From Penicillus capitatus (taxonomy: Eukaryota > Plantae > Chlorophyta), in contig OZ287705.1 in assembly GCA_965649825.1 (NCBI GenBank), positions 372,001 to 436,000 of the forward strand: a DNA stretch of 64,000 nt, in the 5' to 3' direction. The position numbers and the translations under genes were made by a program. Shown here one piece after another: positions 23,259-57,146 of this stretch (positions within the stretch are counted from its first letter, which is position 1; each line of letters starts with the position of its first letter). The notes beneath the pieces were generated by a model. The model saw nothing but the letters and a program-made list of their open reading frames with translations. It searched no databases and was not told the origin of the DNA.

Positions 23259-26200
23259 ATGCGCATTGGAAAAGACACTGCAACCGCATGGGCGATGCCG
23301 AGTGTCCCGCGACGGCGCCTTTCTGTGAAGACATGTTCTCTGCTATGGCTGTTACTTGTCCGCTGCGTTCTTCTGCGTGGCGTGTTTGGCCAAAGTGCGT
23401 ACATGAAAACGTCGCCATCTGCATGCAACGGTCGATTTAGATATCTGCGACGCGTTTGTCGAGAATAATGCGTTGATCGTCGACGCACGGACAGTGGAAG
23501 GCATCGAAGCGTCGACGTTTTTGTTTCAAGATGTGGTCGAGTGTCTCGACGACGGCGCAACGATCCGTTTCGCCGGAGAGCGCTTCTTTGCCGAGGAGAC
23601 GATCCGCATCAACCGAAACGTCTCCATTGCGTCCGCGTCTGAAGGAAAGATCGCTTTTGGGTGCAACGCGAGGCCCGTCTTCGAGATCAGGTCCCCTCGT
23701 CGTCGGCGTTTCGAAAACGGCAACGGGATGTGTGCAGGAAAGCGCGGGTCGATATCGTGGATGTCGTCATCGAGGAGTGCGTGTTGGACAGTGCCGACGC
23801 TCCGCTTGTGGTTGGCTGCGATGCAGCCGTCACTGTCAAGTCGTCGAGATTTCTGCGCAATGCGAACAGTCGAGGAGCCAGTAGCATCAAAGCGATGACT
23901 GGATCCAGCGTCACGATCGAAGACTCTGAGTTTCGAGACAACCGCGGCGAACTGGGGAATGTGATCCTGTCAGACGCAAGCAGCCTTACCGTCAGGAACT
24001 CGACCTTCGCCAACAACAGCGCCAGCAATTCGGAGCGCGGCGGGGGCGTCTTCCGCATCCAAGTGTGCTTTGCCCTGTGGTGTGCCTCAAGGGCCTGTCT
24101 GCCTCTGATGGTGAGAGTGAGGAGATTCGGACGAAGGTGATCGTAACAGGGGAGAGCAGATTTGTCGAGAACAGAGCGGCTGACGGAGGCGCCATTTGCG
24201 TTTCTGGGACTGGCGCTTCGCTCGAGCTCGAAGGAGATGTGCTCTTCAAGGCGAACATCGCCAATCGACGCGGCGGCGCTGTCTTCGTTTCGGAAGCGAC
24301 GCGTGTGACCATCCGCGACGCTTTCTTCGTCGACAACGAAGCAAAGAGCATCGGCGGCGGAGCTCTTTTCGCCGAGGTAGGCGACAGATGTCGCGTAGAA
24401 AGACTGAGCGATCACTTACCGCAGGATCTGAGAAAGAAAGGAGTGGACATTGAGGTTTCCAGCAGCATCTTCGCGCGAAATCGCGCCAGCGGATATGGAG
24501 CCACCGGCGGCGGCATACGTCTCCAGGGAAAAGGCGTGCGCTGTACGTTGTCCAGCTCCGTCACATTCGCACTCAATTCGGCACAGCTCGACGGCGGCGC
24601 AATGCACATCTCCGATCAGGCATCGACGACGATCCGCCACACGACCTTCGTCGGAAACGAAGCCATGGTTGGAGGCGGTGCAGCAGTCTTCATACTGGTA
24701 AGCCCCTGATCATAGACTCGTCTTCGGCGATGTCCTGTTACTGGCATTACAGTCTCTGGAGCAGACGACGGCTTCCACCTTGGACGTGACGGTGACCGAT
24801 TCGACGTTCCTTTTCAACCGAGCCCTGTACAACAAGCGCGGCGGCGGATGCCTCGCTGTCGTCGGCTTTGGATCGAACGTCACCGTTAGCCACTGCAGCT
24901 TCAGGGATAACGAAGGAGGAATTGGAGCTGGCGGCGCTCTGTACGCTTTCCGCGGACCTGTCGTCCGCATCGAGAGCTCACACTTCGAAAGAAACAGGGC
25001 AGAATGGGGCGGCGCCCTCTATGCAGAGGTCATCCGTCGACTTCCTGCCGATCGCTCTTTAACTCCTGCCTTCTGTAGCACGATGCGTCGTTCGACATCC
25101 GATCCACTGCGTTTGTGGATAACTCGGCCGACGAAGGAGGCGCCATGGACGTGTGGGGCGATGTCGATATTGCCATTGACAACTGCACCTTCCAGAAGAA
25201 CCGAGCAGTAATGGAGGGAGGTGCGATCAAGGTGCGAAACTTTGCGTCCGCTGAGGTCGGCCTGGCGTACTTTCGAATGAGCAACAGCCGCGTTGTGGAG
25301 AACGAGGCCGGCACCAACCTCTTTGAAGACAGGCTTTATGGCATCGAGACGCAGGGAGGTGGCATCTTCGCCGAAGGAAGCGGCATCGATCTCGACCTGG
25401 AGAACAACACGTTCCGACGCAATCTGGCTTCCAACGGAGGCGCCTTGAGCATCTACGCCGTCGCCGACTGCAACATCGACCAGAACAATGAGTGAGGATG
25501 ATACAACGAAAGAGTGAGAAGCGAGACTGGTGTCGCTGTAGATTTGCGTGCAACAAAGGCACGTTCGGCGGAGGTCTTTTTCTGGCACTGGACCACAACG
25601 TCCATCCATCCAGACGCAACGCATATCGAGTGGCCAACGCCACTTTCAGGGAGAACCATGTGGAGGTTGAAGGAGGGGCCATTTATGTGACGACCACACG
25701 AACGGAATCCGATTCGGGATCGCTGAATGCGCACAGCTTTCTCGTCCTCATAGAAAAGAGCTCGTTCCGACAGAACACGTAAGTACAGTGAGATGTCGCC
25801 CGCATTCGACTTGCGTGCTCGGATGACAGGGCGAGACACGGGGGCGGCGCTCTGTCCGCCGTCGGATCTGCCGTGAAGGTGCACGAAAACGTTTTCAGGG
25901 AGAACACCGCCCGAGCGAATTCGACCAGTCAGACGAGGCCGTTTCTCGGATACGGAGGCGCCGTGCACGTTCTGACCGGGGCGGCTGTCGAATGCAAGAG
26001 GTCGCTGTTTCTGTCAAACAGAGCGTACGTCGGCGGCGCTGTCTTTGTCCACGACAGCGCCTTCGATGGAGAATCGCTGAACTTCAGCAGGAATGCCGCA
26101 TTCAAGGGAGGCGTTGGCGGCGCAGCGGCAGTCGAGATTTCGAGAGGGAAAAACATTCCTTTCCTTGCGACGGCCAACGAGCAGAGGATGCTCTTCCAGT

Positions 26201-29200
26201 GTGACGTGTGCGATTTCGATCGCAACGACGGTTCTCTGGCAGGAGGTCTGTTCAGTCCTGTCGCTGCGCCTTCCACAGGCGGTCGTGTGTCTAGGAGCTT
26301 TGCACGTGCACGACATGGATCCGGGTTCGACGTTCGAAAACGACAACGATCTAAAGATCGAGGGTTGCCAGCGCCTGCAGCAGAACGCGTTCAGCACGCG
26401 GAGCCATGAGTTGACGTGTCCGACTTACTGGCGGTTTCTGGGAATGGTCCATGCTCGTGCCGTACGGTTCAGGAACACGACGTTTGCCAGAAACGCTGCG
26501 AAAGCTGGCGGCGCCATCTTTACGAACAACCTCACGATGATCACGATCGTGCCAGATGTCGAGGAAGCCTTGGAAACTTCCGTTACCTATGAACTCGACT
26601 ATGTGCTGACGAAGAACGAGACGCAGCATCTCGAAGCGTGCAACGTGAGCTTTCACGAGAACAGCGTCGCCGCCACTGGCTACGGCGAAAAGGCTGCATC
26701 GACGCCCTTTACGGCCTTCCTTGTCAACCTGGACGGCGAAGGAGGACAGGATCCTGAGGAGACATTCGCGAACAGCTCCTTCCTCAGCGGAGATCGGCTG
26801 CGATTCGATGTGGTGTTTCGAGACGGTCTGGGCGAAGCCGTCACCTTTGCAGACAACCTGACGGCTCGCATCAGTTGCGACGAAGAGAGATCGAAGAATG
26901 CGTCGGCGAACTGCTCGAAGCTCGAGATTTCGGGACAGGAAACCGCGCAGGCGAGTGAGGACGGAGTGATGCAGTTTACGGCCGTCCGACTGCGAGGACT
27001 CAGGAAGAAGACGTACGTTCTGCGCATCGACTATCGTTCAATGTCCGAGCTGCAGACGCTGAACGTGGATTCCTCCTTCATTCGTGTGACGATGCGACCC
27101 TGCAAGATCGGCGAGAGAACCGTCAGCCAAGACGGCGACTATCTGGAGTGCCAGGAATGCGGCCAGGGCGAGTTCCAGCCGTTTCCGGACAGGCACGAGT
27201 GCCTGTGCTGCGACGAAGCCGAGAACCACACCCAGTGCGACGGGAAAACGATCGTGCCGCGCGATGGATACTGGCACGCCACCTCGTACTCCTTTGCCGC
27301 TCAGGAGTGCATTGGCCACGACGCCTGCAAGTCGTCAAAGGAAGAAGGAAAGACGCGAACAGAGAAGCTCAGAGAGATCGCAAGAGAGGCCCACGAACGG
27401 GACGAGTTTCTGTTGCACAACTTCAGCCAGAACAGCACGCTGTGCGGAAAGGTCCGTCGACGGTTCGCCTCGCCTTGGTCGCACCTTTCGCTGTGCACAG
27501 GGTTATCGAGGTGTTCTCTGCGGCAGCTGCGAGAATGGCTACGGCAGAGACGGGAGCGTCTGCCGGGAATGCGGATCGCCTGCTATGCGTGCCCTCATAC
27601 TGACGATGCTCATCCTGTGGTCGTTTCTGTTCCTCACCTATTTCATTCGATCCGTGCTGCTGCTGGCCGCTCGCATCGACTTCAACAAAAAATTCAGTCA
27701 AATGAAAACGCAGCACATCCGGCAACGGGCAACGCATTCGCCGTCACTTACAACGCCGCCCACCACTCGACGGGCATACAACCTTCGTTCGAGCGCAGAG
27801 TTCAAGACGGCGCCGCCGTCTTCGGATCTTTCCCCAGGCGAATGGCGGCGAACAACGGCCAATGAGATACAAGAGGAGCGCGATCCGGAGAGCAGCGTCC
27901 GCAGAGATGGCGTCAACAATATCTACGCGGCGAGATTGGACAGACTGCGGCCCTCGGACGGTGCACCAAGACTCGGCGGCGTCGTGGCCATCAAGAAGAG
28001 ACGACATCACGGAACGCGGAACCGATTGTCAGTGAAACTCCAGGCGCTGCACAACCCGACGGACCCTGGCGTCGACATCGAGCCCCTGACGCTGGCCAAC
28101 CCCGTCTCAGAAATCCTCAAGGTGTGTCTGCTACTTCTGGGCTTGACGATGACGCGGTGTGTTCTGTGGCGCTCAGATTCTTGTCAACTTCCTCCAGGTG
28201 ACGTCCGTTGCGATCTCGATCAACGTCGACTGGGAGGACTCTCTGAAAAGGACCCTCTACGCGATGGGTAGGCGCTCAGACACGAAAGCTGTTCTCGCAG
28301 TGCCTGTCTGCTAGGTGCCCTCGGCAATCTCTCCTCCGGCACTGGATACATCTCACTCGACTGCTATCTCAACGAGAGCGATCATCCGAAGTCCCTCCGG
28401 CGGCTGACGATGGCCATCCTCTATCCGCTGCTGATGTTCATGGTCTACGTTTTCGTCTGGGCGAGCTACAGCCTCATCAGGCGAAGAGGAATGCGGTGCG
28501 ACATCCTCTGATGACTGGGCATTCGCGTAGCCGCCTTGGTTTTCTAGTTATTGCCTCCAGAGGATCCTGTTGACGTTTCTGGCGATCAACTACTTCGTCT
28601 ACACCATCATGACCAAGAATCTGCTGCGCTTCTTCGCGTGCACGCACGTCAGCGATGACCGAGAGGGAGCCAACTGGCATCGCTACGTCTGGGAAGAAGA
28701 TACCGACGTCGAGTGCTACGAGGGGCACCACGCTTTACTCCTTGGCGTCCTCGTGGTTCCGCTCTTCCTCGCCGTCTCCTTCGGATTTCCCGTGGCGGTG
28801 ATCGTCATCCTGACGCGCAACAGGAGACAGCTGAACCAGGAGGACTTCGTCCAGACCTTTGGGTTTCTCTATGGAGCCTACGACAGATACTACTGGGAAG
28901 TGATCGTCATGCTCCGCAAGGCGGTGATCGCTGCCATCGCTGTGTTCGCCTACCGTCTCGGTTCCGTCCTCCAAGGCCTCATGTGTGTGCTGGTGATCGT
29001 CGTCGCCCTGTCGGTGCATCTGGCGGCGCAGCCTTTCACGCAGGAGATTCCGCAGCTGAATCATCTGGAGACGTGCTCCCTTGCGGCGACGATCGTTGTC
29101 TTTGTTTCTGGGCTCATGATGAACGCCGAGAAGGTCGAGCAGAGCGATCGCATCGTCCTCAGTGCGATGGCTATTCTCTTCGTCTGTCTCGCCGTTGTGG

Positions 29201-29463
29201 CCACCCTGGTGCAGCTGGTGTACGCCACGGAGGAGTCGATGGATATGAAACTGATCGAGCTGGAAGCGATGGAGATCCAAAGGATCATCGACGCACATCT
29301 GCACGAAAAAGCGCACGCCTTGCTTCAGCACTACGCCAAAACCGCTGCCGAAGCTGTCAAGACACTCCGCTGTCTGTTGAACCAGAAACTGCGTATCCAG
29401 AAACGGGAAGACATCGGCGAAGAAGTGCGCTCAATTTCGCTGCCGCGTTACGAGTCCTGTTAA
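23259..29463 (+). CDS. Large multi-exon membrane protein: signal peptide, Pmp-like right-handed beta-helix repeats, Cys-rich/EGF-like stalk, multi-pass TM C-terminus
   Basis: Hydrophobic N-terminus (CSLLWLLLVRCVLLRGVFG; ATG 23259 or 23295). Many FxxN and GGA(I/L/V) motifs (FVENRAADGGAI, FKANIANRRGGAV, FVDNEAKSIGGGAL, FRDNEGGIGAGGAL, FQKNRAVMEGGAI, FARNAAKAGGAI). Cys-rich CQECGQGEFQP..DGYWH..GYRGVLCGSCENGY. First TM ALILTMLILWSFLFLTYF, then several TM segments in ORF 28570-29463 (FGFLYGAYDRYYWEVIVMLRKAVI). Confidence 0.85.
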
Positions 29464-30659: not shown

Positions 30660-32650
30660 ATGTCCGTCTCATCTGCGCTCTCCGATGCGTGCGTCGGCCG
30701 GCGCGCTCGCGACGCCTCTGAAGGTACATGCAGGATACCGCACTCCATGGTGGAGGCCGAGGAGGTAAAGCAGGATAAGCGCAGGACGCGTTCTATGGCT
30801 GTTGTGGTGACTAGGGTGATGCAGGACACGTGGCACATCTGCTGCCCGTTACCGAAGGCCGCGACAGAGGCGACTCTACCGACCACTCGCTGCAGCGTCG
30901 AATCTATTTGAAAGAAAACGACCTCTTTGCGGGGAGGTCGTTAACACAGTACGGTTTGGCGACCGTGGCGTGATCGCTTTGCCTTTAGGTACTGTATTGA
31001 AAGCAAACCGGCGCTGAATCCACTGAGGCGTGCGGCGGTCGATGCAACAACGGGCCGAAAAGTGTTGCTGAAATTCTATCCGTGGCTGGATGCGACGACG
31101 TTCCATCACGTCCTGTCGATGCATCAGCGCACGCGCGACAACGTCTACGTCTGCAGGTTTCGATACGCACGCATCCTTTACCCGACGTTGGTCTAACGAC
31201 GTAGGTTGGTGGACGTCGTCCTGTCGTCGCGCGGTTTTCCGCCGTGCGTCGTCGTCGAGAGCGGCGACTGCACGTTGTTGGACATTCTGGAGCACGGTCA
31301 CCTGTGGACCACCGATCGCCGAGCGATTCTGCACAAGGTGTCATCGGCCTTGCCGCTGAATGGCATGGACCGTGTCCTCCTATAGGTATTGACGGCGCTC
31401 AAGAGTCTGCACAGTGCCGGCATTGTGTACGGCGACGTGCAGCCGGAAAAAATCGCATGGTTTGCTCGTGAGTTTGTGTGCAAGTTTACCGATCTCGACG
31501 TCGCCTGCCTCGTGGGTCAGAAGAAGGCGCCGACGGTGAACGACATTATGTACGCAGCGCCGGAGGTCGTTCAGTCCATGGACAGTACCCACGTGTGCCT
31601 GGAACCGTCGTCTGACGTGTGGGCGCTTGGCATCCTTGCGCACGAGTTGTGTACCGGTGCGTTATCCGTCCGTCACGCAAGGAGAGCGAAGTGGTTGTGT
31701 CTTGCAGGAAATGGGTTCTACGGATGTCGACCAACGCCGGAATACGTGCGAGATGTTCTCTGTCGACGACGGTGTCTACCGAAGCCGTGTACCGCGAACA
31801 GATCCATACGCTTCTTCCTGACGCGCATGCTCTGCCCGAATCCGGCCAAACGAGTCACCGCTGCGGAGGCATTGACGAGCCGCATCTTTCGCTTCGCAGA
31901 GGCAAAACCGCATCACCGATCGTACACGCATCAAGTCCTGCGCCAGGGCAGCCTGCGTTCGACCCTGACTTGTATCTGTCCGTGCAGATCAGCCGCAGAC
32001 TGGACTCGATGGGCCAGATCTGTCGCGAGACGTTGAACGAGCTCACTGCGTCGCACCTTGTCGCGACGATCCGTGTGGAGGAATGCCCATCGAACGGCGG
32101 CGATTTCTATCTGGGCAAGACGGACGATGCCTTGTCGTTCAGAGACGAAGAGCTTCCCAACGAAGACGTGCATTTTTTGCGCCTGGGTCAGAACTACCGA
32201 CTGCGCATCGCCGTCGCGCGCGGTCGAAACTCCACCGCCGCGGTGGGCCGAGTGGCGTCCGTTTGCGCCATGGGGCCGAATAAAGAGGTCGTCGAATTGC
32301 GAAGCGTCGTGCTCGTGGACACCGAATCCGAATGCAAGGCCGTGGCCCATTTGGACCTCTCAGCATTTCACTCGCCGGCCTTTCGACGCATATCCCCCAC
32401 TTTCGGCTCGCTGCGCCATCGGTACGCCACACTCGACGTGCAGTTGCGACTGACGACGGTCGGTCATCCGTCTCGGCACATCGAGCTGTCTCGTGTCCTC
32501 TACTGTAAGATGGTGCACCGACGTCACCCATTGTTGTTTCATAGATGTCTTAAGATGTCACGTCAACTGTGGACGTCCATTCCGCAGTGGCTGAAAGACA
32601 TCACGCGATTCTGCATGTCGTGCATTCCAACCGCCATAGAAACGATGTAG
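30660..32650 (+). CDS. K4: multi-exon kinase-fold protein (best-preserved catalytic residues) + domain X; 5' end uncertain
   Basis: ENDLFAGR|YCIESK..VLLKFY..YVCR|LVDVV..FPPCVVVESGDCTL..|VLTAL..VYGDVQPEK..KFTDLD..AAPE..DVWALG..MLCPNPAKRVTA..| domain X (DVHFLRLGQNYRLRIAV..YATLDVQLRL..LYCKMV). Confidence 0.85.
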
Positions 32651-36983: not shown

Positions 36984-39900
36984 ATGCGAGTTACAGGTTC
37001 GTCCGTTTCAAGTTACGGTTTCCGCATCGATGCTGCAGAGGGACGCGGGTCGTGGGAAGGAGTGGAGTATTCCTACACACTAAGTACACATCTGTGGTAT
37101 GGAGTTTACGAGGTAGCTGCCTCCGTTCGTGCTGCCAGAACCCTTATCTGCGTCTCTGCCGCAGTGGCGTGTACACCGTTCTATGTTCGACGAAGAACAT
37201 CGGAGGATCAAGTCGAACGTCTTTGATATCGGTGGCGAGAAATGGTGAAGTCGAGAGCAATGACCCGGCGGCTTTTATTCGTTTTGCTCTGGCCAGGAAA
37301 GTTCTCGCCGAGCATCTGGGCAGTCAGAGATTGGTTGTCGGCTTACAGTCGACGACGACATCATCCATTAAAGCTCACTACTCAATCACTCTCGTCAACC
37401 ATAAAGACGAAAGAAAGAATCTGGTCAGAGGTATGAAGACATGACGCCATTCTTACCTGTGCGAGGAGGTGTGTGTTTCCTGCAGCAAAGTTCTTTGATC
37501 GCCGGTGGTGGAATAAAAGTCCCCAGAGGGTCGATCCCTTCTGCATGGCATCGGTCACCGAGGATACCTCATGTGGATACCTTAAGGAAGACTGTTTCAC
37601 GTTGCGATTGGAATTGAGAATTAAGCATCCAGACAACGAATCTGCAACATTTGCCATTCTCCGAAGGATGGTCTTCTGCGAAGTGAGTGCCGAGAAAGCC
37701 CTTCTAGTCGCTAAAAGTGGACGATGTCAGTGGAACATCAAACATGCGTGGGAGATGAGTCCATCCGTGTTAAGAACGGATCACTTCAAGATCAACAACG
37801 ACATGTGAGTTGTGGAAAGCAATGCCTTCCATTCCATTCCTATTGATCTCATGTCGGTTGCACAGGGAGTTGAGACTGTGTAAGGAGGGAGGAGCTTTCG
37901 GTGCTGAAGGTCTGAGCGTTCTTCTCGCGAATATGAGCAGCCGGAATGCTTGCTTTAAGGGTGAAATCTGCCTCATAAAAAGTGGTTCTTCAGCTCACAG
38001 CACGACCTTAAGTTCTTCATGCCGTCATCGGTTCTTCCATCCCCTCTGTCCAGAATTTGCCGAGCAGATCGATGTTGGCGCTGCTAAGGGATGGGTCCGA
38101 TATCTCGAGAAGAAGGATGTGACAGACGGGGGTTTTTCGGTCGGGGAGGATGGCTGGTTGAAGATTTCCGTGAAGATCACGCTGATGAGCCACCAGGTTT
38201 TCACAAACGCACTCCCTCCAATTCTTAGACGACTTTCGACGCATCATCTTCCCAAGATCGATAGTGGCACTCAGGTGCGATATCAAGGTGCCAACAGATT
38301 TCTAAGAACTGCAATCACTGTACACCGGCTTGTGACAGAGGGCATTGGACGGACTGATAAAATCAATCATTACTACAGGCTGACGACAAACAAGTGGTTT
38401 GCTCGCTACGAAGTTAGAGATCCGAGGTCTCCATCTGACTGCGATGACGTGTTGTGTTTGAACAGTTGTTTGTGCATCGATCTTTCCTGGAACAGAAGGT
38501 CGGACAGGTCTTCACCAACGCGTTCGAGGTGGAAAACCGATTATGGTGCAAAGAAGGCATTCTTGCGTTCTTCTGATGTGGCGTGTTTAAGGTGCATTGG
38601 AATAAAGCGCGATGAAGACAGGTATCTCTGCGCTTGCTTTTCATCAAAGAACGAGATTCGAGTGGAAGTGCAGTTTGGATTCGAGCTGGTGAACCATTAC
38701 AAAAACGCTCACAGTAAACGCACCGGTAAAGGAAACGGATTCTGAATAGACTGCAAGGCTGAGCTGATGCCGACAGGAACCCTTCATGAGTTCTCGTTCA
38801 TCGATGACTGCTGTACAGACAAACTCCTTCCATGCACCGAGATAGCGTCACCGGATAATGGATTCCTGGATGATGACCATTTTCTCGTTCGATTGGACAT
38901 GAGAGTGAAGCAGAAAGATAGTGAACTGTGTGAGGTCACCGTAGACGGAAAGACTGCAACCTGCCAAGTATCCTTCCTCTGTGTTCGATGTATGGTCTCA
39001 CACTAGAGCTGGATGTTAGTGGAAGTCGAGATTCGTGAGAGAAATGAGTCCGTGGCGCGTTGTCACCAGAACCATCAGAATTAGAGACTCGGCAATGTGA
39101 GTATCTCCCAAGTATCACGGCGGCCATTTGAAGATTCTCTGTGAGTAGGCAGATGTTCTTTTATGTCAACGGTCGGTGTGGTTCGGACCTTCCAGTCATT
39201 TCAATTCAACAGCAGAGTACAGAAAACCTCATTCGAATGTTCTTGAAAATCGACCTTCTCCATCATATCTACTCCAAGAGAGTCAGATTGAAGAGTAACT
39301 CTATCTCTTGTGTCTTGTTGCATCGCATGGTGCAGTTTAGGCTGTCATCGTGTACTTCGTCAGAACAAAGAGATGTGGATAGTCGAGTTGTCCACTCCGA
39401 GTCAGCTGGAGGACGAAGACTTAGGCTTTGTCAAAGATGGCTGGACGATGGTCGAGATCCAGATAAGGCTGTTTGATGAACGCGAGTTCGATGAGGAGAT
39501 CAGGCGCATATCAAGACCTCTGGATCGGGTGCCTCGAGGATGGAAGGAGCCCGACCCTCGCGAACTGATGCACGTCGAAGGTCTGTCGTTCAACGATGTC
39601 TTCCTGCTTCGATGGCCATTGACTGCAGAGGGAGGCGGAGAAGACAGGGGCATTCCTTACACTTTCATTCTGAATAGGTACAAGTACTTCGCCACATACG
39701 AGGTAAGTTCTGCCAAAGACCACCATCTCCGCTGTGTTATAATCTGTTTTTCTTCTTTGACAGTTAAAAGTGCCTCGAGCGTTTCTGCCTGCGAGAGAGA
39801 CTCGCTTAAATACCAATCTGTTCAATCTGGACGGCAGAGAATGGCTAGATCAGTACTCGTTGACGACGCGCCTGAAACGTGTGATGTTTTAGGAGTGTGC

Positions 39901-42900
39901 AGATTTGGCACCGCTTTGACGGAAGCCTGGGTGCTTATCTGTGGAACGAGAGCGTGACCAAGGCAACAGCTCATTTCGCTTTTACGATCGTGAACAAAGA
40001 ACATAACAAAAGTGAATCTGCAGGTGATGGATCCACTAGAGATATTTTCCATTTTGAAAGATGTTTGTTCTATTCGAAGGATTCTGCGAGGAATTCTTTC
40101 CCGTTGTATGCGAAGACAATTCAGGGTTTACCCTCTGCTCTGCTGCGAGAGTGAACGATCCGTCGAAGGAATTCTTGGAGAAGGACTTCTTCCTCGTGCG
40201 TGCGGAGATCAGACTCAAGCTCCAGGACAATGAGCGCTGGACGGCATCCGTCAAACGAAAGACGGCTACATGCACTGTATGTTCGATTTTTTCTTCGAAT
40301 CACATCGATATTCGACATCTGTCTGCAGTGGAAGCTGAAGGGACTGCCAAGTCTCTGTCCATCAGTATTGCGTTCCGAGTTCTTCAATATTAAAAAATTG
40401 AAGTGGTGCACACGGCATCATTTGACTCTACTCATGTCGACTGGAATATGCGTTTGTGCTTGCAGGAGATTGGCACTGACGCCGAGGGGAAATACGTCTA
40501 ACTCTGACAACATCGGAGTTTACCTCGGCAATTGTCAGAATCATCCCGTCCGTGTGAGAACTGAGTTCACTGCCATGAATCACACGTCGGCAAAGAAGGC
40601 TTCTGAAAATAAAGTTGAAAGTCGGCACCGTTTTCTGTTAACTTATATGGCTGAAGGGATTCTACAGAATTCACCGAGAGCATCGCAGCAAACGGAGTCC
40701 TGGGCATTTACCAGTTTTTGACGAGCGACCAGTTGACGGACGAGTCACTCGGATTCCTGGAAAGAGGCTGGGTCACATTGACTGCGAGAGTCACCCTTCT
40801 CGATGTCGATCGCGTGCCGCAGTGTGAGTCCTGCCGAAAGGACCCCGTATGCTCTGTACGTCACGGCAACACGTACGAACACTCCCTCCTCTACAATCCA
40901 CTAATACCCACTGCCAGAAAGCATCTGTGCTACTGCACCAAATGCGCGAAGAAACTGAAGGAGTCGCTGCTCGATGAACAGGAGATCAAGTGCCCTGTAT
41001 GCGAGAAGTTGGTGGAGAGGGTCATCATGAACGACGGTCCCTACTTCGAGCGATGTCCCACATGCCTCATCGACCCCACCTGCGCCGTCAGACACGGCAA
41101 CACGTAGTGCTGTCGCCATCACGCGTTCTGCTGCATGTCTGGCTGTGTTAGGAAACACCTCTGCTACTGCACGGACTGTGGCAGAGAGCTTGCCAGGAGA
41201 CTGAGAGGGAGAGTGTTTCAGGACTGCATCGTCAGCAAGGCTGGACCAAAGAAGATATCGCTCGCGGAGAAGACGACATCAAAATGCCATGTGTGTGGTG
41301 TTGATGACCCAACCTGCTCAGTACTGCACGGATCCACGTATGATCACACGAAAGCTTGATTGATTGTCGCTTAAGCTGATGTCCAGGGAATGCACATGCT
41401 ACTGCCAGCTCTGTGCGTGCAAAGAATTTGCGAAGGTGCTTGCAGAGAAGTGCGTGCTCAAGTGTCCGGTGTGTCAGAGAGAGGCAGATCGCATCGTCGT
41501 CAAGGATGCTGCTGACGATCAGCGAGTCCCAGCTCTGCGCAGATGCAAGAGCGTAGCGACCGTTCGAGAAAAGCAGGAAAAGATTTCTGATGTGCATAGA
41601 GCTGTGGTCTCAGTACAACGAGAGTCATCGAGTCAGACAGTTGCTGAAGGCGGACAGAATACCCAGAAGGACTTGGCGGTATCCAGATATATCGAAACAA
41701 TGTATGCCATCAGAACGCTACTCGAGGAAACTCCAACTCTTCAAAAGGCAGAGATCATCCTTCGACAAGAGCCACCGAGTCAAAAAGCTGCCGAAAACAG
41801 ACAGCACACGCAGAGAAGTTTAAGGCTGCTCAGATACATAAAAGCATTGTCTGCTTGCAAGAAGCTATTCGATGCGATTACAAACTTCTGTGGAGGCGGG
41901 GTCCAACTTCCGCTGAAGCTGTCGAATCAGATAGTCGAGGAAGGCAAACAGAACGCGCAGACATACTCAATAACCCCACCATTCGAGGAGGGTAGAAATA
42001 TCGTCATGGAAGGGGGGAGAAATATCGTCATGGAAGGGGGGAGAAATATCGTCATGGAAGGGGGGAGAAATATCGTCATGGAAGGGGGGAGAAATATCGT
42101 CATGGAAGGGGGGAGAAATATCGTCATGGAAGGGGGGAGAAATATCGTCATGGAAGGGGGGAGAAATATCGTCATGGAAGGGGGGAGAAATATCGTCATG
42201 GAAGGGGGGAGAAATATAGCCATGGGAGGGGGAGAAGCAGCAGACTTGTCGAACAACTATAAAACTGAGATCCCCAATCAGAAAGCATCAGCAAGTCAAA
42301 CAGTCGAAGACAAACAGAACGCACAGGCATACTCAGTAACCGGATTGTGTGATGAAGCAATGTCCAGTCTAGAAGACATGGCAGGCGTGTTACTGGGAAA
42401 TTGTGACGCCGAGTTCCCAGGTCACCCGGAATCAACGCGTCAGAAAGTTGCTGAAGGCAAACAGAATACACAGAATGGAGGCTTACCGAAAGGCACATAC
42501 GAAAAAACAGAGGCTGCTTTCGATAAGCTATTCGATGTGATCTGCAACTTCATTGCCGTCGAGACTCCAGTCCAACAGGCGGCATCGGATCAGACTGTCG
42601 TCGAGGGCGCATGGACACTGCGACAGGTCCCGCTTCTGCACAGATGCGAGAGTGCAACATTCTCTTGGGATAAACAATGTCCAATCTGCCAGACGACCCC
42701 AGACATCGATCATGAAAGCAAGTAAGAGTCTTTTCCTTCGACGTGATGTGTTCAAGTCCAGCAATGTTGCAGCATGCATCTATGCTATTGCATCGAGAAC
42801 AACAGGAAGATAGTCAGAAAGTTGAAGGGCCGGGAAACACGCGTGTGTCCTTTCCCATTTTGCCGCAAGCAAGTCAATCGCGTCATCATGAACGCCGCCC

Positions 42901-43909
42901 CGTGGAAGCCAAGAACTGTCGAGGAGGGTATCAAGGAGTGCGTGCTGTGTAAAATGAAGAAAGAGGCTATGAAGGCAGCAGAACAAACTCAGAAAACGAA
43001 AGGCTCATCCTCCACGTCGAAGGAAGCAGCTTGCAAGACGGGAGATAGCAGACAGAAGACTAGAGGTTCAACCTCTAAAACGACAGAAGCTAGCAAGCCA
43101 GCAGACCGCACGAAGAAGACGAAAGTCCCGATCTCAAAAACAAAAGAAGAAGCCACCAAAACAGCAGACCGCATGCAGAAGACGAAAGCTCCGACTACAA
43201 AGAAGAAGGGAGTGACTTCCAAGGCAACAAACAGTGCACAGAAAACAAAGACTTCCGCTCCTAAGGCAAAGGAAGAAGTCAGCAGGACGAGGTATCGCAC
43301 GAAGAAGAGCAAAGGTGCATCACCCAAGGCGACAGATCCTGACACAGAAGCAGCAATCCCCACATGCTCTGTCGTCCATGGAGACACGTAAGAGCAATTC
43401 CCAGTGTCCGTTCTAATCTCTCATGCTGCACTAGGAGACACAAGTGCTACTGCGATACTTGTGCGCAGAACGTGCTTAAGGACAAGCTGCGCACAGGGAA
43501 AGCGATCAGATGCCCTGTGTGTCGAGAAGTGGTAGATCGGATCATCATGCAGGACACATCGGACGAGAGGAAGAGTCTGGGGATGCGCCGATGCAAGAGC
43601 GCCATGCTCGCCAGAGAGTTGCCACCGTCAGAAACGGCTGTCAGAAGAACGACCGTGAGTCTTGTGTGCGACGAAGACCTGGATCAGATCGTTGTCGAGG
43701 AAGTGTTGGATGACAAGGTCCCTTCCCGACTGCGCCGATGCAAGAGTACTGCCGATCAGATGCCCGTTGTTGGTGCACCCGACGAGGGGCACGTCTCGAA
43801 GCTGCCCAGGTGCAAGAGCTTCGCTGGAAGGCTGACTGCGGAAAACGATCTGGACGATGATTCCCCGTACAAGCTGCGCAGAAGCGAGAGCGCAGACTTG
43901 CTTCCCTGA
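36984..43909 (+). CDS. Multi-exon 6xMATH + 5x C2H2C4(MDM2-like)-RING protein, putative E3 ubiquitin ligase; start uncertain
   Basis: MATH hallmarks occur six times (e.g. WRVHRSMFDEEHRRIKSNVFDIGGEKW; AHYSITLVNH; GYLKEDCFTLRLELRI; WKLKGLPSLCPSVLRSEFFNIKKLKWRLALTPRG..IGVYL; GFLERGWVTLTARVTL). After splicing the RING reads CxxC..HGNTKHLCYCxxC..CPVC..V.RVIM. MATH6 runs into RING1 in one open frame (40718-41107). Stop TGA at 43909. Confidence 0.85.
41985..42224 (+). repeat. Coding minisatellite, 24 bp x 10 (EGGRNIVM)
   Basis: Unit GAAGGGGGGAGAAATATCGTCATG. The 240 nt equal 10 units: 8 identical, first and last slightly variant. In frame within ORF 41364-42725. Confidence 0.95.
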
Positions 43910-47427: not shown

Positions 47428-49813
47428 TCAGGGACATTCGGACGCATCATTTCCTCCACTCTGTCTGCTGCGTCTGTCCTCCTTTCGCGCGAAGATTCCT
47501 AAATACTTGTGCCAGATCAATGGGTTACTGCGATGCACGACTTTGCAGTAGAGACGATCACTGAGTTCCACTTCGTGTGGAGAATTATCAGCGAGCTGCA
47601 CCTTCGTGCGTACGCCGATCTTGACGTATGTTCTGTCTGTTGGGCCAAAAAAGGGCGAGATGGAGTCCAGTGTCGGAGAGAGGATGCGTTTTGGATCGAA
47701 GGAGATCAAGGCGGTGACGGATCCGTTCTCGATCCGCTGAACGAAGTCCAGCGACTGCTCTTCGGCATCCGACACCTTTACGGTGACCGATGCGATGCCT
47801 TCGACGGGGAGGAGCAGCTGAGGGTCGTACGACAGGCGCATCCGAAGGCGGAGGCTCTCGGAGAGTCTAAGAATGTAGACCGGGTCGTGCGGAAGGCGGT
47901 TGTCGAAGAAAGTAAGAGGCGCTTCGGTCCTCCTGTCGTAGAACGGAAGCGAGGGATCGCTGTCGTCGGCGAACTGCTGGACGTCCAGTTGGCGATTTAG
48001 ATGGCGGTGCACGGCGTGAAGCGTCGACGACTCGCTCCGCTGAGGATCCAGATCCGGCGGCAGATGCTCGGACGCCAACTATGAAGAGCGAGACTCGGAC
48101 GTCATCCGACCGAAAGAGCAGCACCTACCTCGTCCACGGCGTCGGCTCTCTGGTACACGTCTGTCGCCGATCGGAAGAGGACGTCCTCCAGAGCCTCCGT
48201 CGCCGTTCTCCTCTTCTCCGGATCTCTCTGCAGCAGCGATTCGACGAAGTGAAGGCTCTGCTGCTCGATGGCGTCTTCGATGCGTCCTCTGCGGTTGGCC
48301 GACAGCCACCTCTTGACGGTTCTCTCGGCAGAGACAGGCTTCTGTTCCAACTGCCTCTCTATCAGGTCTGGAATCCCGTCCGCATCGATGATGTGGGAAC
48401 CTGGTGTTAGAAGAAGCCACTTGCAAGGGAGACCGTCCAGAGCACGGCTTACTGGTCAGGACCTCGAAGGCGAGGAGGCCGAAGGACCACATGTCCATCG
48501 AAGGCTTCGCACAGACGCTCCCGTGCCCTCTCTCGAGTGACTGAGTTATGTCCGGACACGTGTATCTGCATGCGTTCGGCTGGACGGTGGACTCTCCGGT
48601 GGGCAGCGCGCTCGACAGGTTGACGAGCTTCCACGAGAAGTCGTCGGCAAACCACATGATGTGCGTCGAATCCAGGCTGCCGTGGACGATTCCCTGACCG
48701 TGACTGTACTCGAGCGCTTCCAGCACCTGAGCACACCAACGCAGACGTCAGTCATCACACGTCGATCGACAAACGCGACGTACCGAGTATAGAATCGCTT
48801 TCTGTTCGATAGGACTCAGCTGACGGTGGGACATCCTGTCGGCTAGTGTGTAACGGCCTCTTTCCAGCACCAGACACGGAGGGAAGCCGTGGATGCTCTC
48901 CATGCTGTCCAGCATCCTGCACAGGCGACGCCAATGAGTGAACGGACTCCCATCAGACGATGTCTGTCGTCACCTGCAAACAAATCTGGCACCGTTCTGC
49001 AGTGCTCTGTGCGCTTTCGTCGCGTTTTCGAATTCACACAGACTTCCTGGGAAGAACTTCAGGAAAACCTCTTGCCCGGTCGACCGCTCCACTGCATATC
49101 GGCAATGTGGACTATCATGAAGTACTTCAGGTTGGATCCGGTACCTGCTCCAAAGATGGACGCAGTGAACAGAAGACAGACACCGTCTGACCGCACCTTC
49201 CAGCGAACAGGCATCCACTCTCAAGCGCGTCCAGCCTCATTTCAATGTCCATGAGGCCGCTGTCTCTGTCGGTGTCAAGAAGATCGCGAGTCGAACGTTC
49301 GTCCGCCACGAGACGGCCTGAGATGCTGGATGAAGACGCGTTGCGCCACGCGTCTGTCGGGCACTGTGGTTGGGCAGCCGAGCTAGTCGGCTCCGAGGTC
49401 GCCGTCGCCATGCGCGTGTCCATGCGAGGCGGCGCGCGGCGTCCTGCACGCAGGCGATCCGTCTTGCCGCCGCCGAGAGCGACGGCTTTACCAACGGCCT
49501 TCCTCTCAGCGTCATCGCCACTCGGATTTTCATTCGACGATTCCCCTTCACCCATGTCGTCGCCCTCAGCATTTCGCGACACGTGCCTCGTCGTTGTCGG
49601 CGCCGCCGTTCGACGTGGCCTCCGCAGATGCGGCACGTCTGACGACGCCCTTCCACGCCTTGCCGTTCGGAGTAACCCCATGCTCGAGTTCGTTGACCCG
49701 CCGATGGATGGCAGCTGGAGACATCGATGCTGAAGACGGCTGCGAAGTCGCGCAAATGCCGACGGTCGTTTCCCCTCGGCCACTGAGGCCTCCTGCGTGC
49801 TGTCCGCTGTCAT
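47428..49813 (-). CDS. K5: multi-exon pseudokinase + domain X
   Basis: ATG 49813; SGCLFAGR|YRIQPE..VFLKFF..FVCS|MESIHGFPPCLVLERGRYTL..|VLEAL..VHGSLDSTH..KLVNLS..TCPD..DMWSFG..LLQRDPEKRRTA..| domain X (ORF 47428-48078). Confidence 0.85.
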
Positions 49814-53855: not shown

Positions 53856-56800
53856 TGGCTCTGCACAAGGCCAGTGATGTGTGACGCCTCGTTGATGTGA
53901 CATCGGAGCCATGACGGCATCTGTTTTCGTGACCTTCGGCGTAAATGACTCTCTCCGCCATCACTTCTCGTATCGGAGAAACCATTCATGTCTTGCACAT
54001 TTGATGATCTTCTGTCACAAGATCGATATCGACCTTGCCCTTCATGAACTTCTTTTGTACTTTCGTATGTCTCGAATCACACCTGAATCTCCGGAAAGCC
54101 ATCTAATCTCCCTTACCGAATAGAGCTCGTGTTTTATGAGAGCAAACAGCAAAATTCGGTCATACTGTCACATCTCTTTGTACACCGACGATACTGTAAA
54201 GGTCACACTACGCTGTGGTTCGTCTCGATGCGTAAGGCTTTGCCGATTGTTGATGCGCGTGCGATCTTATCTAGCATTTCCAAAATGTCTCCATCGATCA
54301 GGTGTGGATAGATGCCGGTAAAGGAAGAACGAAGTGTGATCTCATTGACAAAGGAGCGATTCTATGACTGTTTCGAATACACCCTCTGGTGCAGCTCTGC
54401 AGCGCTACTCCCCTCGCACTTTGAGATCATCCTTCCTCTCACCAATCGCGTTGCCAGACGAAAGGATTTCGGCAAGGTATGCGATCTGCTAATTGTACAC
54501 GACGGATACGAGACGTCTATTGTCTACAGCGCCTCATGGCTATTACAGAAACACACACGGCAGACAGATACTTATTCGCCGCCGTCATGGATAAACTTCG
54601 TCCAAAAGCGACGCATTGTACATACAACAGTATCAGCAAGCCGCCAGAATACAAGCACAGCGCCTAGTGTTGTACAACTAGTATATAGGGTCAGTGATCT
54701 TCATTCATTCCTCAGTACTGTCAACGAACCCGAATAGCAGAAAGATCAATGGCCGGCAGTGATGCTGTCATCACGTGCAGACGTTACCTGCTAACATGTC
54801 ACGGAAGTGTGAGGTAGTCGCGTTTGTCATTGGTTCGTTCGTACCTCGAATATCGACGTTATCTGACGGCACGTCTCCTTCGAGAAGGGAGCCCTTTCAC
54901 ACCGTACGGTCTCCCTCCAGTGTCGTCGCTCGTCGATGTTTTTGCCTTGCACGAATGCTTCTTGACGGTGTCTGGCGACGAAACTCGTTTCGTGCGCGCT
55001 TTGGATTTTTCTCCCGGCTTCGTTGGCAACAGGCGCCGGCACCTGGCGAATGCGTTTCCCATTCAGTCGTCCGGAGCTGAAACACAAAGAGCAATTGAGT
55101 ACTGCTGAGGAAAAAAGTGAGACACCCGAGTGCCTACCAGTCGAGGAGGCGCGTTGCGTGGTGGCACTCGTTGAGACTCTTCCACACAGTCGGATAGAGT
55201 GAAAGCGGCCAAGACGAAGCTGCACACGGCAAGCCTCAGTTAGGCAGATGCGAGATGCCTTTCTCGTCTGTCAAGGAGACAGCCAGCCTCTCTCTTGCAA
55301 GTGGTGCCGAACAACAGTGTTGGGCAGTTAATGAGGACACGTGCCTCTGAGACGCTCTTTCGATATCTAGAGACCTAAATGGGCTTGACACGAGGTGAGA
55401 AGATCATTGGACGTGGATGAGAAGTCACAGTTCGGTGACGTGTGCAGAGCAACTGCTGACCTGTCCGACTGCCCGTCCCTTTGATGCGTTCATTGCGGAC
55501 CATCAATACCATCCGTCGTCATGATCGAAGTCGCGTGAGGCGGATCCACCATCTGCGTTTCCCTACGACGAACAGACATCGCGAAAGTGAACGGCGGGCG
55601 CACAGTAAAAGACGAGTGCGTTTCCAGCCTTCTCTCGCTGGACAGATGGCCGCATGGCAACCGCAATCTGTGTCAGACGCCGGCTTAGAGGTCAAGGACT
55701 GCTTGAACATCTTCTGGTTTCGGCTAGCTCTTGTTCTCAGACCGGCCGATGGAAGGGAGTCAGTCATGCATTGTTCGGCAGATCGATGGATGCTCCAGTC
55801 TGCCTGACCGTGCCATCAAAAATGGAATTCATTATGAGTTCACATAAACGGGAACCCTCGCTCTTCCTTCGGCACTCCGGCTCTTGTGATTATTCGAATC
55901 GCTGCGCAACGGGAGAGAGAAATCAGATGCGAGAGTGATCGGAGGATAGCAAAGTGGCGGAGCTGAGCACCACACGCGCCTTCTGTGCAGTGGAGCGGGA
56001 CCCATTCTTTGCTGCCAGATGACAGGAATGCGGTTGATGTGGTGGATGCAGTTGTTTCTCGGACCCCCGCGTGCGGGTCTGCGAAGAAATGCCCTCCTCC
56101 TTGCGGCGTGATGCTGCCGGCCATTGCAGCGTCGTCCACTGGTCAGACAACGAAACCGTCCAGATTCATTCAGCTGCAGGCGCTGCGTGTCCGCCGTCCC
56201 CGCATCGTTTTCGGAAGAAGGCACTGGAGTGATATCTCACTCAAATCTCCTCTGACGCATTCAGTGAAGGCAGATGCCGTCGCATCGAAGAGACGTCCTG
56301 TCACATCTGAAGGTTTTGAAATGACGGACCCGTGGGCCCAGAAGAAGAAAGAAGTTACGAACAAGCCTAAGGCTGGCGGCAGTCTGCCATGAGTGAGCAA
56401 ACTCTGCTCCTAGCAGTCTAGCATCATACGTAGAAGTGGAGTCATCATCCAACATGACTGTTTCCGAGAAAGAATTGGGTGGGGGACCTTCCCCTGGAGA
56501 GCAGAAGAAGGCCATGCAACAACAAACGAAGTCGAAGAGAAGAGTCCTTCCTCTTCACTCCATGGAGTCGGATGTCGCGATACTTGTCTGTCGTTGAAGG
56601 AATGACATGCAGATTTTATGAATGACGCTTCCACTTATTCCTCTATTCCTTGTGCCTGACTGACATCCTTTGCCGCTCTTTGTTGGTTTTAGCGTTTCTG
56701 TTTGTAAAGGCCGGTGGACTTCGCAATTGCTCAGTTTCAGGAGAGCGAAAAGACTTCTCATGGGCAGAATAGCGAGCGAGACATCCAGTACCTCTCTCAG

Positions 56801-57146
56801 AAGCATCAGAGTTCACTGTCTTCGCTGGATTTTCTTAGAAAAGGGGCAGATGCCTTTCATGACGTGTTTCAACGGCGGTCTATATTGCCGACGTGAAGGC
56901 ATCTACCGTGCTGTCGTATGCGAGTCGCGCGCAGAATCTAACTTTTCGCAACCGTCTCGCATTAGGACGCAGACGTGTCTTCTGAAATTCGAGAGAAGTT
57001 ATAATATTTGACACATGGTTACACGTGTGAGACAATGACAATGCCAAATTATATAAATCAACCTCATGACCCAAAAGAATGTGAAAAGTGTTTGCTGACG
57101 ACGACCGAATCCGTTTTTACGGGTACCACAACAGACTTAAGGAAAT

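What the first reader, a model, noticed from the sequence alone, without database searches (positions are those of the whole stretch)
36984..43909. 6xMATH + 5xRING protein: a TRAF-like combination in reverse order and amplified
The six MATH domains form three tandem pairs with a ~1.3-kb period (YxxYE| junctions near 37100, 38400 and 39690, with matching introns). Five RING modules follow. TRAFs place one RING before one MATH, and MATH-BTB or MATH-USP are the usual partners; I know no named family with this layout. Its position inside the pseudokinase cluster suggests a multivalent substrate-binding E3 ligase (inference).
Basis: partly seen in the sequence, partly recalled or inferred. Interest (0 to 1): 0.8.

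Follow-up and report, generated by a model that had tools for sequence, protein, structure and literature searches.

The report
Six-MATH, five-RING ubiquitin ligase gene
The window really does encode one 1,869-residue protein with six MATH (TRAF-like) binding domains followed by five MDM2-type RING modules; it belongs to a small multi-copy family seen only in an unidentified intron-rich eukaryote, and it is most likely a multivalent ubiquitin ligase with a domain layout not described before.

Summary
36984-43909 (+) is a single gene of 27 exons and 26 very short introns (42-61 nt), encoding 1,869 aa. It has three tandem MATH-pair units (donors after ..YE at 37112, 38412 and 39702), then five RING modules, each split by an intron after HG.T.

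One exon (40668-40872) carries both the end of MATH6 and the start of RING1, so the fusion is real. Five further full-length copies in two environmental assemblies keep every intron and an intact ORF (dN/dS 0.17-0.58). A compact 6-MATH/3-RING subfamily and a 363-aa MATH-MATH-RING relative (P0012, intronless contig) also exist.

MATH identity rests on direct Pfam hits for D1, D3 and D6, a weak hit for D2, and profile homology only for D4 and D5. The RINGs match only MDM2/MDMX in PDB. RING2 and RING4 lack a zinc ligand in every copy; RING5 carries a 142-211-aa Lys-rich insert.

No named or annotated relative turned up in 5.8 and 1.84 billion proteins. Ligase activity is inferred, not shown. The pseudokinase neighbourhood is not conserved at all paralogous loci, so it gives no functional support. 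The organism is unidentified. I file it as a new variant of a known kind, of moderate interest.

The parts
36984..43909 (+). Complete CDS: 27 exons, 26 introns of 42-61 nt, 1,869 aa. Exons: 36984-36996, 37039-37112, 37165-37244, 37297-37430, 37486-37682, 37731-37804, 37866-38011, 38054-38287, 38339-38412, 38466-38545, 38592-38725, 38777-38967, 39020-39096, 39149-39294, 39341-39580, 39629-39702, 39764-39843, 39893-40023, 40080-40276, 40329-40405, 40466-40620, 40668-40872, 40918-41103, 41152-41337, 41387-42721, 42773-43387, 43435-43909.
   Evidence: Open spliced ORF. Every intron boundary is GT..AG at the projected site, with an intact ORF, in L002, L003, L004, L005 and L008. The N-terminus MRVTEGRG parallels MRMIEGSG of P0012.
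36996..37682 (+). MATH domain 1 (a-type, with an N-terminal EGxG..YxYxL..WYGxYE extension), aa 5-166
   Evidence: Pfam MATH_2 at 31.3 bits and 33.7 bits in the L003 copy; hhalign to D3/D5 at >=99% probability.
37731..38193 (+). MATH domain 2 (b-type), aa 167-286
   Evidence: hhalign to D6 at 97% probability; weak full-length MATH_2 match in the L003 copy, 15.8 bits.
38287..38967 (+). MATH domain 3 (a-type), aa 318-477
   Evidence: Pfam MATH_2 at 23.8 bits and MATH at 17.3 bits; hhalign to D1/D5 at >=99% probability.
39020..39480 (+). MATH domain 4 (b-type), aa 478-598
   Evidence: Transitive only: hhalign to D6 at 96% probability. No direct Pfam or PDB hit.
39580..40276 (+). MATH domain 5 (a-type), aa 632-792
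   Evidence: Transitive only: hhalign to D1 at 99.2% and D3 at 99.4% probability. No direct Pfam hit.
40329..40807 (+). MATH domain 6 (b-type), aa 793-916
   Evidence: Pfam MATH_2 at 41.5 bits, above the cut-off of 32; 46-56 bits in paralogs, where PF00917 also scores 29.7 bits.
40668..40872 (+). Junction exon 22: one uninterrupted exon encoding the last strands of MATH6 and the CxxC..HGN half of RING1
   Evidence: Read directly from the sequence; conserved at 82-87% nt identity in L002/L003.
40823..41047 (+). RING1 (aa 922-981): full C2H2C4 ligand set, tail ..VIMNDGPYF; intron at 40873-40917
   Evidence: Best PDB matches are MDM4 (4.5e-5) and MDM2 (1.3e-4), aligned over the whole RING; ligand table.
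41054..41236 (+). RING2 (aa 984-1028): degenerate. The last pair reads C-I-V-S (C[IV]V[SN] in all copies); intron at 41104-41151.
   Evidence: The RING1-3 block has dN/dS 0.17.
41285..41501 (+). RING3 (aa 1045-1100): full ligand set (4th ligand is Cys here, His in L002/L003/L005/L008; Cys also in L004); intron at 41338-41386
41502..42677 (+). Low-complexity linker (aa 1101-1492). It includes the 24-nt tandem repeat at 41990-42236 (GGRNIVME x10) and two LRRC[KE]S-type motifs.
   Evidence: TRF: 10.3 copies, 97% matches. No Pfam domain. dN/dS 0.58, the least constrained part.
42678..42905 (+). RING4 (aa 1493-1551): degenerate. The 6th ligand is Asn or Ser, and the last pair is CPFPFC. Tail ..VIMNAAPW; intron at 42722-42772.
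   Evidence: dN/dS 0.17.
42939..43549 (+). RING5: CVLC (42939-42950), a Lys-rich insert of 137 aa (42951-43361), then the core CSVVHGDT|RHKCYCDTC..CPVCRE (43362-43549); intron at 43388-43434
   Evidence: The spacer between CxxC and the core HG motif is 142-211 aa in all copies and changes length in multiples of 3.
43550..43906 (+). C-terminal tail (aa 1751-1869) with four LRRC[KE]S-type motifs
   Evidence: dN/dS 0.39.

Best explanation
The locus is one expressed-type nuclear gene of an intron-rich eukaryote. It encodes a single-chain RING-type E3 ubiquitin ligase.

Shown:
- Three tandem copies of a seven-exon block each encode a pair of MATH domains, an a-type and a b-type.
- Five MDM2/MDMX-type RING modules follow. 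They arose by exon-level duplication; exons 23 and 24 are both 186 nt, each holding the C-half of one RING and the N-half of the next.
- The whole protein is under purifying selection in all six intact full-length copies modelled.

Inferred:
- The six MATH domains act as a cis-linked multivalent receptor for short peptide motifs or oligomeric targets. Tandem repetition would supply the avidity that TRAFs obtain by trimerising and SPOP by polymerising.
- The RING array recruits E2~ubiquitin. RING5 looks the most competent. It is closest to the single RING of the minimal relative P0012, has Leu at the CxPhiC E2-contact position and Arg after the last Cys, and has a full ligand set. RING3 looks the next most competent.
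- The conserved but ligand-deficient RING2 and RING4, and RING1 (Ser at the contact position, Glu after the last Cys), would serve as structural partners in RING-RING pairs. This would resemble inactive MDMX pairing with MDM2, or the non-catalytic first RINGs of Mind bomb.
For: - Gene model and single ORF.
- Conservation of all 26 introns and of intact ORFs in five further copies.
- MATH6 and RING1 share one exon.
- A MATH-MATH-RING ORF lies on an intronless contig from a relative, with precomputed Pfam MATH_2 x2 + zf-C3HC4_3.
- MATH identity.
- RING identity (only MDM2/MDM4 reach significance in PDB).
- Purifying selection: dN/dS is 0.35-0.39 in the MATH units and 0.17 in RING1-3 and in the degenerate RING4.
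- Ligand and contact-residue table.
- The b-type MATH domains of paralogs and relatives keep a GWG..F motif at the position that aligns with the DWGFKKF stretch of SPOP.
- The roles assigned to the CxPhiC residue, the Arg after the last Cys and the aromatic C-terminal tail come from established knowledge of MDM2/MDMX, IAP and RNF4 RING dimers. They are not from a tool.
Against: - No ubiquitination, E2-binding or zinc data exist.
- No usable structure model was obtained: single-sequence AF2 of P0012 gave pLDDT 32.
- Two of the five RINGs lack a ligand, and RING1 lacks the usual E2-contact and linchpin residues.
- RING5 has an unusually long insert (142-211 aa) between its first Cys pair and the rest. 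It is unproven that these halves fold into one RING.
- D4 and D5 are MATH by transitive homology only.
- In the window copy, D6 reads NGVLG where its paralogs have GWG.
- There is no transcript evidence for the window copy itself.
Confidence: 0.6

Rival explanations
1. It is a non-catalytic scaffold or adaptor. The MATH array binds partners, and the RING modules serve only for folding or dimerisation, as the MDMX RING and many TRAF RINGs do. The protein would then assemble signalling complexes rather than ubiquitinate targets itself.
For: RING2 and RING4 lack a zinc ligand in every copy. RING1 has Ser and Glu at the positions normally used to hold and activate E2~Ub. The best PDB match of RING1 is the inactive MDM4.
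Against: RING3 and RING5 keep all eight ligands, a hydrophobic residue in CxPhiC and, in RING5, Arg after the last Cys. The single RING of the minimal relative P0012 does the same. Strong constraint on the RING blocks, dN/dS 0.17, fits either reading.
Confidence: 0.2
2. Its biological role is that of a lineage-specific, copy-number-dynamic recognition family for immunity, non-self or conflict, like TRIM5-type restriction factors or the expanded nematode MATH/BATH genes. The MATH surfaces would track fast-changing targets. This concerns the role and is compatible with E3 chemistry.
For: - At least 6 intact full-length copies (plus the partly resolved L010) and a compact subfamily exist in two assemblies.
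- Same-genome copies are closer to each other than syntenic orthologs are: L008-L003 80% versus L008-window 68%. This suggests turnover or gene conversion.
- Independent tandem-repeat expansions occur in linkers and loops.
- The loci sit in regions rich in other expanded families, namely pseudokinases and beta-helix/PMP-like genes.
Against: Region-wide dN/dS is below 1 everywhere: 0.35-0.39 in the MATH units. Site-wise positive selection was not tested. No pathogen or target is known.
Confidence: 0.15
3. It is an artefact. Either two adjacent genes (a MATH array and a RING array) or a decaying pseudogene have been read as one ORF.
For: None beyond the lack of transcript data for this copy and one GC donor at 39844.
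Against: One exon spans MATH6 and RING1. The 1,869-codon ORF is open across 27 exons. The same structure is intact in five other copies, with dN/dS well below 1.
Confidence: 0.02

Closest known systems
MDM2 / MDMX (MDM4) RING domains
   Same: These are the only PDB RINGs significantly similar to RING1 (E 4.5e-5 to 3e-4) and to the RING of P0012 (E 3e-6). The alignment covers the full length, including the two-His motif HG.T.H..C..CAK.L and CP.CR. There is an aromatic residue in the tail after the RING..PYF after R1..PW after R4, and ..MF at the C-terminus of P0012. Intact and defective RINGs coexist, recalling the MDM2-MDMX pair.
   Different: No SWIB/p53-binding domain, acidic region or RanBP2 zinc finger was detected. 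There are five RINGs in one chain instead of one. In the window protein the RINGs are not at the extreme C-terminus.
TRAF proteins
   Same: They combine a RING with a MATH (TRAF-C) domain. MATH acts as a peptide-motif receptor whose affinity depends on multivalency.
   Different: The order is reversed (MATH N-terminal, RING C-terminal). No TRAF-type zinc fingers or coiled coil were detected. There are six MATH domains in cis instead of one per chain of a trimer. The RING subtype is MDM2-like, not TRAF-like.
SPOP / MATH-BTB adaptors of cullin-3 ligases
   Same: SPOP is the best structural-sequence match of the MATH profile (E 1.6e-5). It performs multivalent substrate capture for ubiquitination.
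   Different: There is no BTB/BACK domain. Ligase chemistry would be supplied in cis by RINGs instead of by CUL3-RBX1, and multivalency by tandem repeats instead of polymerisation.
Mind bomb (MIB1/MIB2)
   Same: The logic is the same: tandem substrate-binding modules at the N-terminus and an array of several zf-C3HC4_3-class RINGs at the C-terminus separated by linkers. From established knowledge, the last RING is the catalytic one.
   Different: The N-terminal modules are unrelated (MIB/HERC2, ZZ, REP and ankyrin versus MATH). No sequence relationship was shown beyond the RING class.
MATH-only tandem proteins of plants and nematodes
   Same: They have two to four MATH domains in tandem, often as duplicated pairs (PMC3664471), and are lineage-specific multigene families.
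   Different: Those proteins carry no catalytic or RING module.

Membership tests
MATH/TRAF-C domain superfamily (Pfam PF22486 / PF00917) | Sequence match to the MATH profile at or above the curated cut-off | tested here: met
   D6 scores 41.5 bits against a cut-off of 32. In paralogs D6 scores 46-56 bits, with PF00917 at 29.7 bits against 21.2, and D1 scores 33.7 bits. D1 (31.3) and D3 (23.8) in the window are just below the cut-off. D2 is weak, and D4 and D5 qualify only via hhalign.
MATH/TRAF-C domain superfamily | Eight-stranded beta-sandwich fold with a peptide-binding groove | tested here: inconclusive
   The six-domain profile aligns to the SPOP and USP7 MATH structures. The AF2 model of relative P0012 was unusable, at pLDDT 32.
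RING finger, zf-C3HC4_3 class (PF13920) | Cross-brace set of eight Cys/His zinc ligands with canonical spacing | tested here: met
   R1, R3 and R5 have all eight ligands. R2 lacks the 8th and R4 the 6th. Pfam scores of 16-25 bits are below the cut-off of 27. The PDB match to MDM2/MDM4 is significant.
RING finger E3 ligases | E2-dependent ubiquitin transfer | not testable with these tools
   This needs a biochemical assay.
TRAF family | N-terminal RING, TRAF-type zinc fingers and a coiled coil, with one C-terminal MATH domain | tested here: not met
   The order is MATH x6 then RING x5. There is no zf-TRAF hit in Pfam scans of all pieces.
MDM2/MDMX family | N-terminal SWIB/p53-binding domain and a central RanBP2-type zinc finger | tested here: not met
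   Pfam finds neither.
MDM2/MDMX family | C2H2C4 RING with an aromatic C-terminal tail | tested here: met
   Full-length alignment of R1 and of the P0012 RING to MDM2/MDM4. Tails are ..PYF (R1)..PW (R4) and ..MF-COOH (P0012).
MATH-BTB (SPOP/BPM) | BTB domain following the MATH domain | tested here: not met
   No BTB or BACK hit.
USP7/HAUSP | USP (peptidase C19) catalytic domain after the MATH domain | tested here: not met
   No UCH hit.
TRIM37 | RING-B-box-coiled-coil preceding the MATH domain | tested here: not met
   No B-box hit; the RINGs are C-terminal.
Mind bomb | MIB/HERC2, ZZ, REP and ankyrin modules before the RING array | tested here: not met
   None detected by Pfam. Only the arrangement is analogous.

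The most novel reading that the evidence does not exclude
This would be a self-contained, single-chain ligase in which both features that other MATH/RING systems obtain by oligomerisation are hard-wired in cis. Six MATH domains would replace TRAF trimers or SPOP polymers for avidity. Alternating intact and ligand-deficient MDM2/MDMX-type RINGs would form intramolecular active/pseudo-RING dimers. The repeated LRRC[KE]S motifs in the linker and tail would act as phospho-regulated switches, or as internal pseudo-substrates for the MATH array.
Probability: 0.2. Interest if true: 0.6.

Novelty: new variant of a known kind. Interest (0 to 1): 0.45.

Why it matters
MATH domains and RING fingers are both well understood, but every described family that joins them puts one RING before one MATH (TRAF, TRIM37), or else supplies the ligase in trans (SPOP-CUL3).

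Here a conserved, selected, multi-copy family does the opposite, and it amplifies both parts. It uses the otherwise narrowly distributed MDM2/MDMX RING subtype, and it keeps ligand-deficient RINGs under strong constraint.

If the protein is active, it offers a natural test of two ideas. One is whether multivalency in cis can replace oligomerisation in substrate capture. The other is whether pseudo-RING/RING pairing can work within one chain. It would also extend the known distribution of MDM2-like RINGs.

The case also shows how a gene with 26 introns of about 50 nt is invisible to ORF-based annotation of metagenome assemblies. All database relatives were unnamed fragments.

Tried and rejected
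- Pfam on raw stop-to-stop ORF pieces gave only marginal hits. The domains became recognisable only after splicing.
- My first gene model (24 exons, 1,916 aa) missed three in-frame introns: 36997-37038, 38288-38338 and 39581-39628. Frame-shifting indels in the paralogs exposed them.
I used the exact piece 40670-41103 instead.
- The search for homologous proteins with the whole model found nothing among proteins of 1,054-3,353 aa. With the unit+RING alignment it found six ENA fragments only. With P0012 it found only itself.
- JGI metagenome scans found no relative of the RING1-2 exon and only P0012's own contig.
- An MSA for structure prediction, built from 119 exact exon translations, was grossly misaligned by MAFFT and was dropped.
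- Single-sequence AlphaFold2 of P0012 gave pLDDT 32 and was not used for fold search.
- A D2+D4 profile against PDB gave no hit.
- Attempts to identify the organism failed. Rfam found nothing in the window or in seven loci. A literature search for the sample accessions found nothing. A Nop14 fragment from L011 matched Chaetomium and human only weakly. The window holds no obvious housekeeping gene.
- A literature search for MATH with a C-terminal RING found no described family.
- L010 has homology from exon 3 onward, but its 5' end could not be modelled.
Full report
**What is there**

The window has about 50% G+C. The stretch 36984-43909 on the + strand contains no long ORF, only many short open pieces in alternating frames. 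Translated self-comparison shows three copies of a roughly 1.29-1.30-kb unit between 37000 and 40800, plus repeated Cys-rich pieces after 40800.

I read the three frames base by base and used the parallels between the units. This gave a model of many short exons joined by GT-AG introns of about 50 nt. The first version had 24 exons.

**Correcting the model with relatives**

A HMMER scan of 1.84 billion representative proteins, using the exact window piece 40670-41103, found only 14 proteins at E<=1e-3. All were unnamed environmental sequences. Their contigs gave homologous loci:
- L002 and L003 align to the whole gene at 76-78% nucleotide identity.
- Projecting my exons onto them showed GT..AG at every intron. 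It also showed frame-shifting length differences inside three of my exons.
- Those differences mark three further introns that happen to be in frame and stop-free in the window: 36997-37038, 38288-38338 and 39581-39628.

The final model has 27 exons, 26 introns (42-61 nt) and 1,869 codons, with ATG at 36984 and TGA at 43907-43909. The same 27-exon structure gives intact ORFs of 1,778-2,038 aa in L002, L003, L004, L005 and L008, with almost no adjustment of the projected splice sites.

Of the six window introns whose lengths are multiples of three, five have non-multiple lengths in at least one paralog and the first is fixed by frame-shifting indels, so all six are real. The one GC donor (39844) is GT in every paralog. 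Across five copies, 130 introns range from 42 to 64 nt, with a median of 51.

**One gene, not two**

Exon 22 (40668-40872) is an uninterrupted exon. It encodes the last strands of MATH6, a five-residue spacer, and the CxxC..HGN half of RING1.

The distant relative P0012 (363 aa, 34% identity) comes from a 1,313-nt intronless JGI contig and is colinear with one unit plus one RING. Its N-terminus MRMIEGSG.. parallels MRVTEGRG.. here, which also supports the start codon and the 13-nt first coding exon. Its precomputed Pfam string is MATH_2, MATH_2, zf-C3HC4_3.

**The MATH part**

Each unit is a seven-exon block with identical intron positions and phases, and it encodes an a-type and a b-type domain.
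- Pfam on spliced domains gives MATH_2 for D1 (31.3 bits), D3 (23.8) and D6 (41.5; cut-off 32).
- In paralogs, D6 reaches 46-56 bits, D1 33.7 bits and D2 15.8 bits. D4 and D5 have no direct hit.
- Profile-profile comparison ties D1, D3 and D5 together at >=99% probability, D2 to D6 at 97% and D4 to D6 at 96%.
- A profile of all six domains hits SPOP MATH (E 1.6e-5) and USP7 MATH. A D2+D4 profile alone hits nothing.

So six MATH domains is correct, with D4 and D5 resting on transitive homology.

**The RING part**

Each of the five modules is split by a phase-2 intron after HG(N/S/D)T. Exons 23 and 24 are both 186 nt, each carrying the C-half of one RING and the N-half of the next. This shows exon-level duplication.

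Spliced RING1 matches only MDM4 and MDM2 RINGs in PDB (E 4.5e-5 to 3e-4), over its full length and including the two-His motif. The RING of P0012 does the same (E 3e-6).

The ligand table is the same in all copies:
- R1, R3 and R5 are complete.
- R2 ends C[IV]V[SN], so it lacks the 8th ligand.
- R4 lacks the 6th ligand and has CPFPFC.
- R5 has its first CxxC separated from the core HG motif by 142-211 aa, mostly a Lys-rich insert whose length varies in multiples of three.
- The residue before the second Cys is S, T, V, I and L in R1 to R5. The residue after the last Cys is E, Q/R, R and R in R1, R3, R4 and R5.

From general knowledge of RING E3s, these features make R5 and R3 the best candidates for E2 binding.

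**Selection and family**

Nei-Gojobori dN/dS over ten pairs:

| Region | dN/dS |
|---|---|
| MATH units | 0.35-0.39 |
| RING1-3 | 0.17 |
| RING4 | 0.17 |
| RING5 | 0.29 |
| Lys-rich insert | 0.37 |
| Tail | 0.39 |
| Linker | 0.58 |

The degenerate RINGs are therefore maintained.

The window lies on ENA ERZ25074695 ctg340041.
- L004 is a second copy about 50 kb away on the same contig.
- L002 and L010 are further copies in that sample.
- L003, L005 and L008 lie on 1.2-1.8-Mb contigs of ERZ26696514.
- L008 is the syntenic counterpart of the window locus. Even so, its protein is closer to L003 (80%) than to the window copy (68%).
- L011 and L009 carry a compact subfamily with three MATH pairs and three RINGs, without the long linkers.

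**Context**

The window does hold a cluster of kinase-like paralogs whose catalytic loop reads HGNL/HGSL and which lack DFG. However, a kinase-like neighbour was seen only at the window, L004 and the syntenic L008 (the last by flank homology). L003 and L005 sit next to beta-helix/PMP-like genes, and L002 next to an RCC1 gene. The neighbourhood therefore gives no specific functional evidence.

**Novelty**

No protein of comparable length or architecture, and no named protein, was found in the 5.8-billion or 1.84-billion collections or in JGI contigs. The MATH literature lists no class with a C-terminal RING. An InterPro architecture query could not be run, so analogous layouts with unrelated sequences cannot be excluded. 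The organism could not be identified.

**Verdict**

The most likely function is a single-chain multivalent RING E3 (confidence about 0.6), and this function is inferred, not shown. I file it as a new variant of a known kind, of moderate interest.

Noticed in passing
window ~1372-3030(-), 6046-7686(+), 13306-13842(-), 20637-21954(+), 31377-32557(+), 47476-49147(-), 57614-59250(+), 61051-61587(-): Eight paralogous kinase-like genes. Where read, the catalytic loop is HGNL/HGSL instead of HRDL and there is no DFG, so they are pseudokinases. Pfam Pkinase hit at E 1e-16 on 1935-2810(-).
   Followed up: partly
window 9216-10028, 14864-15718, 17305-18156 (-): A second paralog family (45-78% aa identity between copies) with no Pfam hit.
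   Followed up: no
window 3760-7893 vs 55125-59457: Direct segmental duplication of about 4.2 kb, 51 kb apart (60-97% identity at the translated level). It includes one pseudokinase copy. L008 aligns to both copies.
   Followed up: no
window 23438-29335 (+): Large gene homologous to L005:14942-20875, whose ORFs carry precomputed Beta_helix / Chlam_PMP hits. A similar gene also flanks L003. Pfam on the window ORFs 26093-27865 and 28570-29463 gave nothing.
   Followed up: partly
window 41990-42236: A 24-nt tandem repeat, 10.3 copies, 97% identical, in frame (GGRNIVME x10) within the linker. Paralogs have unrelated repeats elsewhere: a 33-aa unit x7 in the L002 linker, and EEEEDSIS x12 inside a loop of MATH2 in L005.
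   Followed up: partly
window 41538-41552, 42639-42653, 43586-43600, 43733-43747, 43805-43819, 43877-43891: Six copies of a short motif, ..L(R/H/P)RC(K/E)S.. (once RRSES), lie after RING3, before RING4 and four times in the tail. It is conserved in all paralogs and looks like a basophilic-kinase site. The compact subfamily ends with RRRSQS.
   Followed up: partly
window 39844-39892: The only non-GT donor of the gene (GCTAGA). All paralogs have GT at the aligned position. An alternative GT donor 9 nt downstream would add three residues and give a 40-nt intron.
   Followed up: partly
L011:6925-11539 and L009:7326-11947: Compact subfamily in both assemblies: three MATH-pair units followed by three RINGs without long linkers. 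In L011 the second RING has an intact CPFC pair. No full gene model was built.
   Followed up: partly
L008 (ERZ26696514 ctg303815) vs window: The syntenic counterpart of the window locus encodes a protein only 68% identical to the window copy but 80% identical to a non-syntenic copy of its own genome (L003). This suggests gene conversion or recent duplication.
   Followed up: partly
L009:18319-20927 (-): A Ty3/gypsy-type retrotransposon ORF (RVT_1, RNase H, integrase) lies near the compact family member. TRP (PF06011) and sulfotransferase ORFs are on the other side.
   Followed up: no
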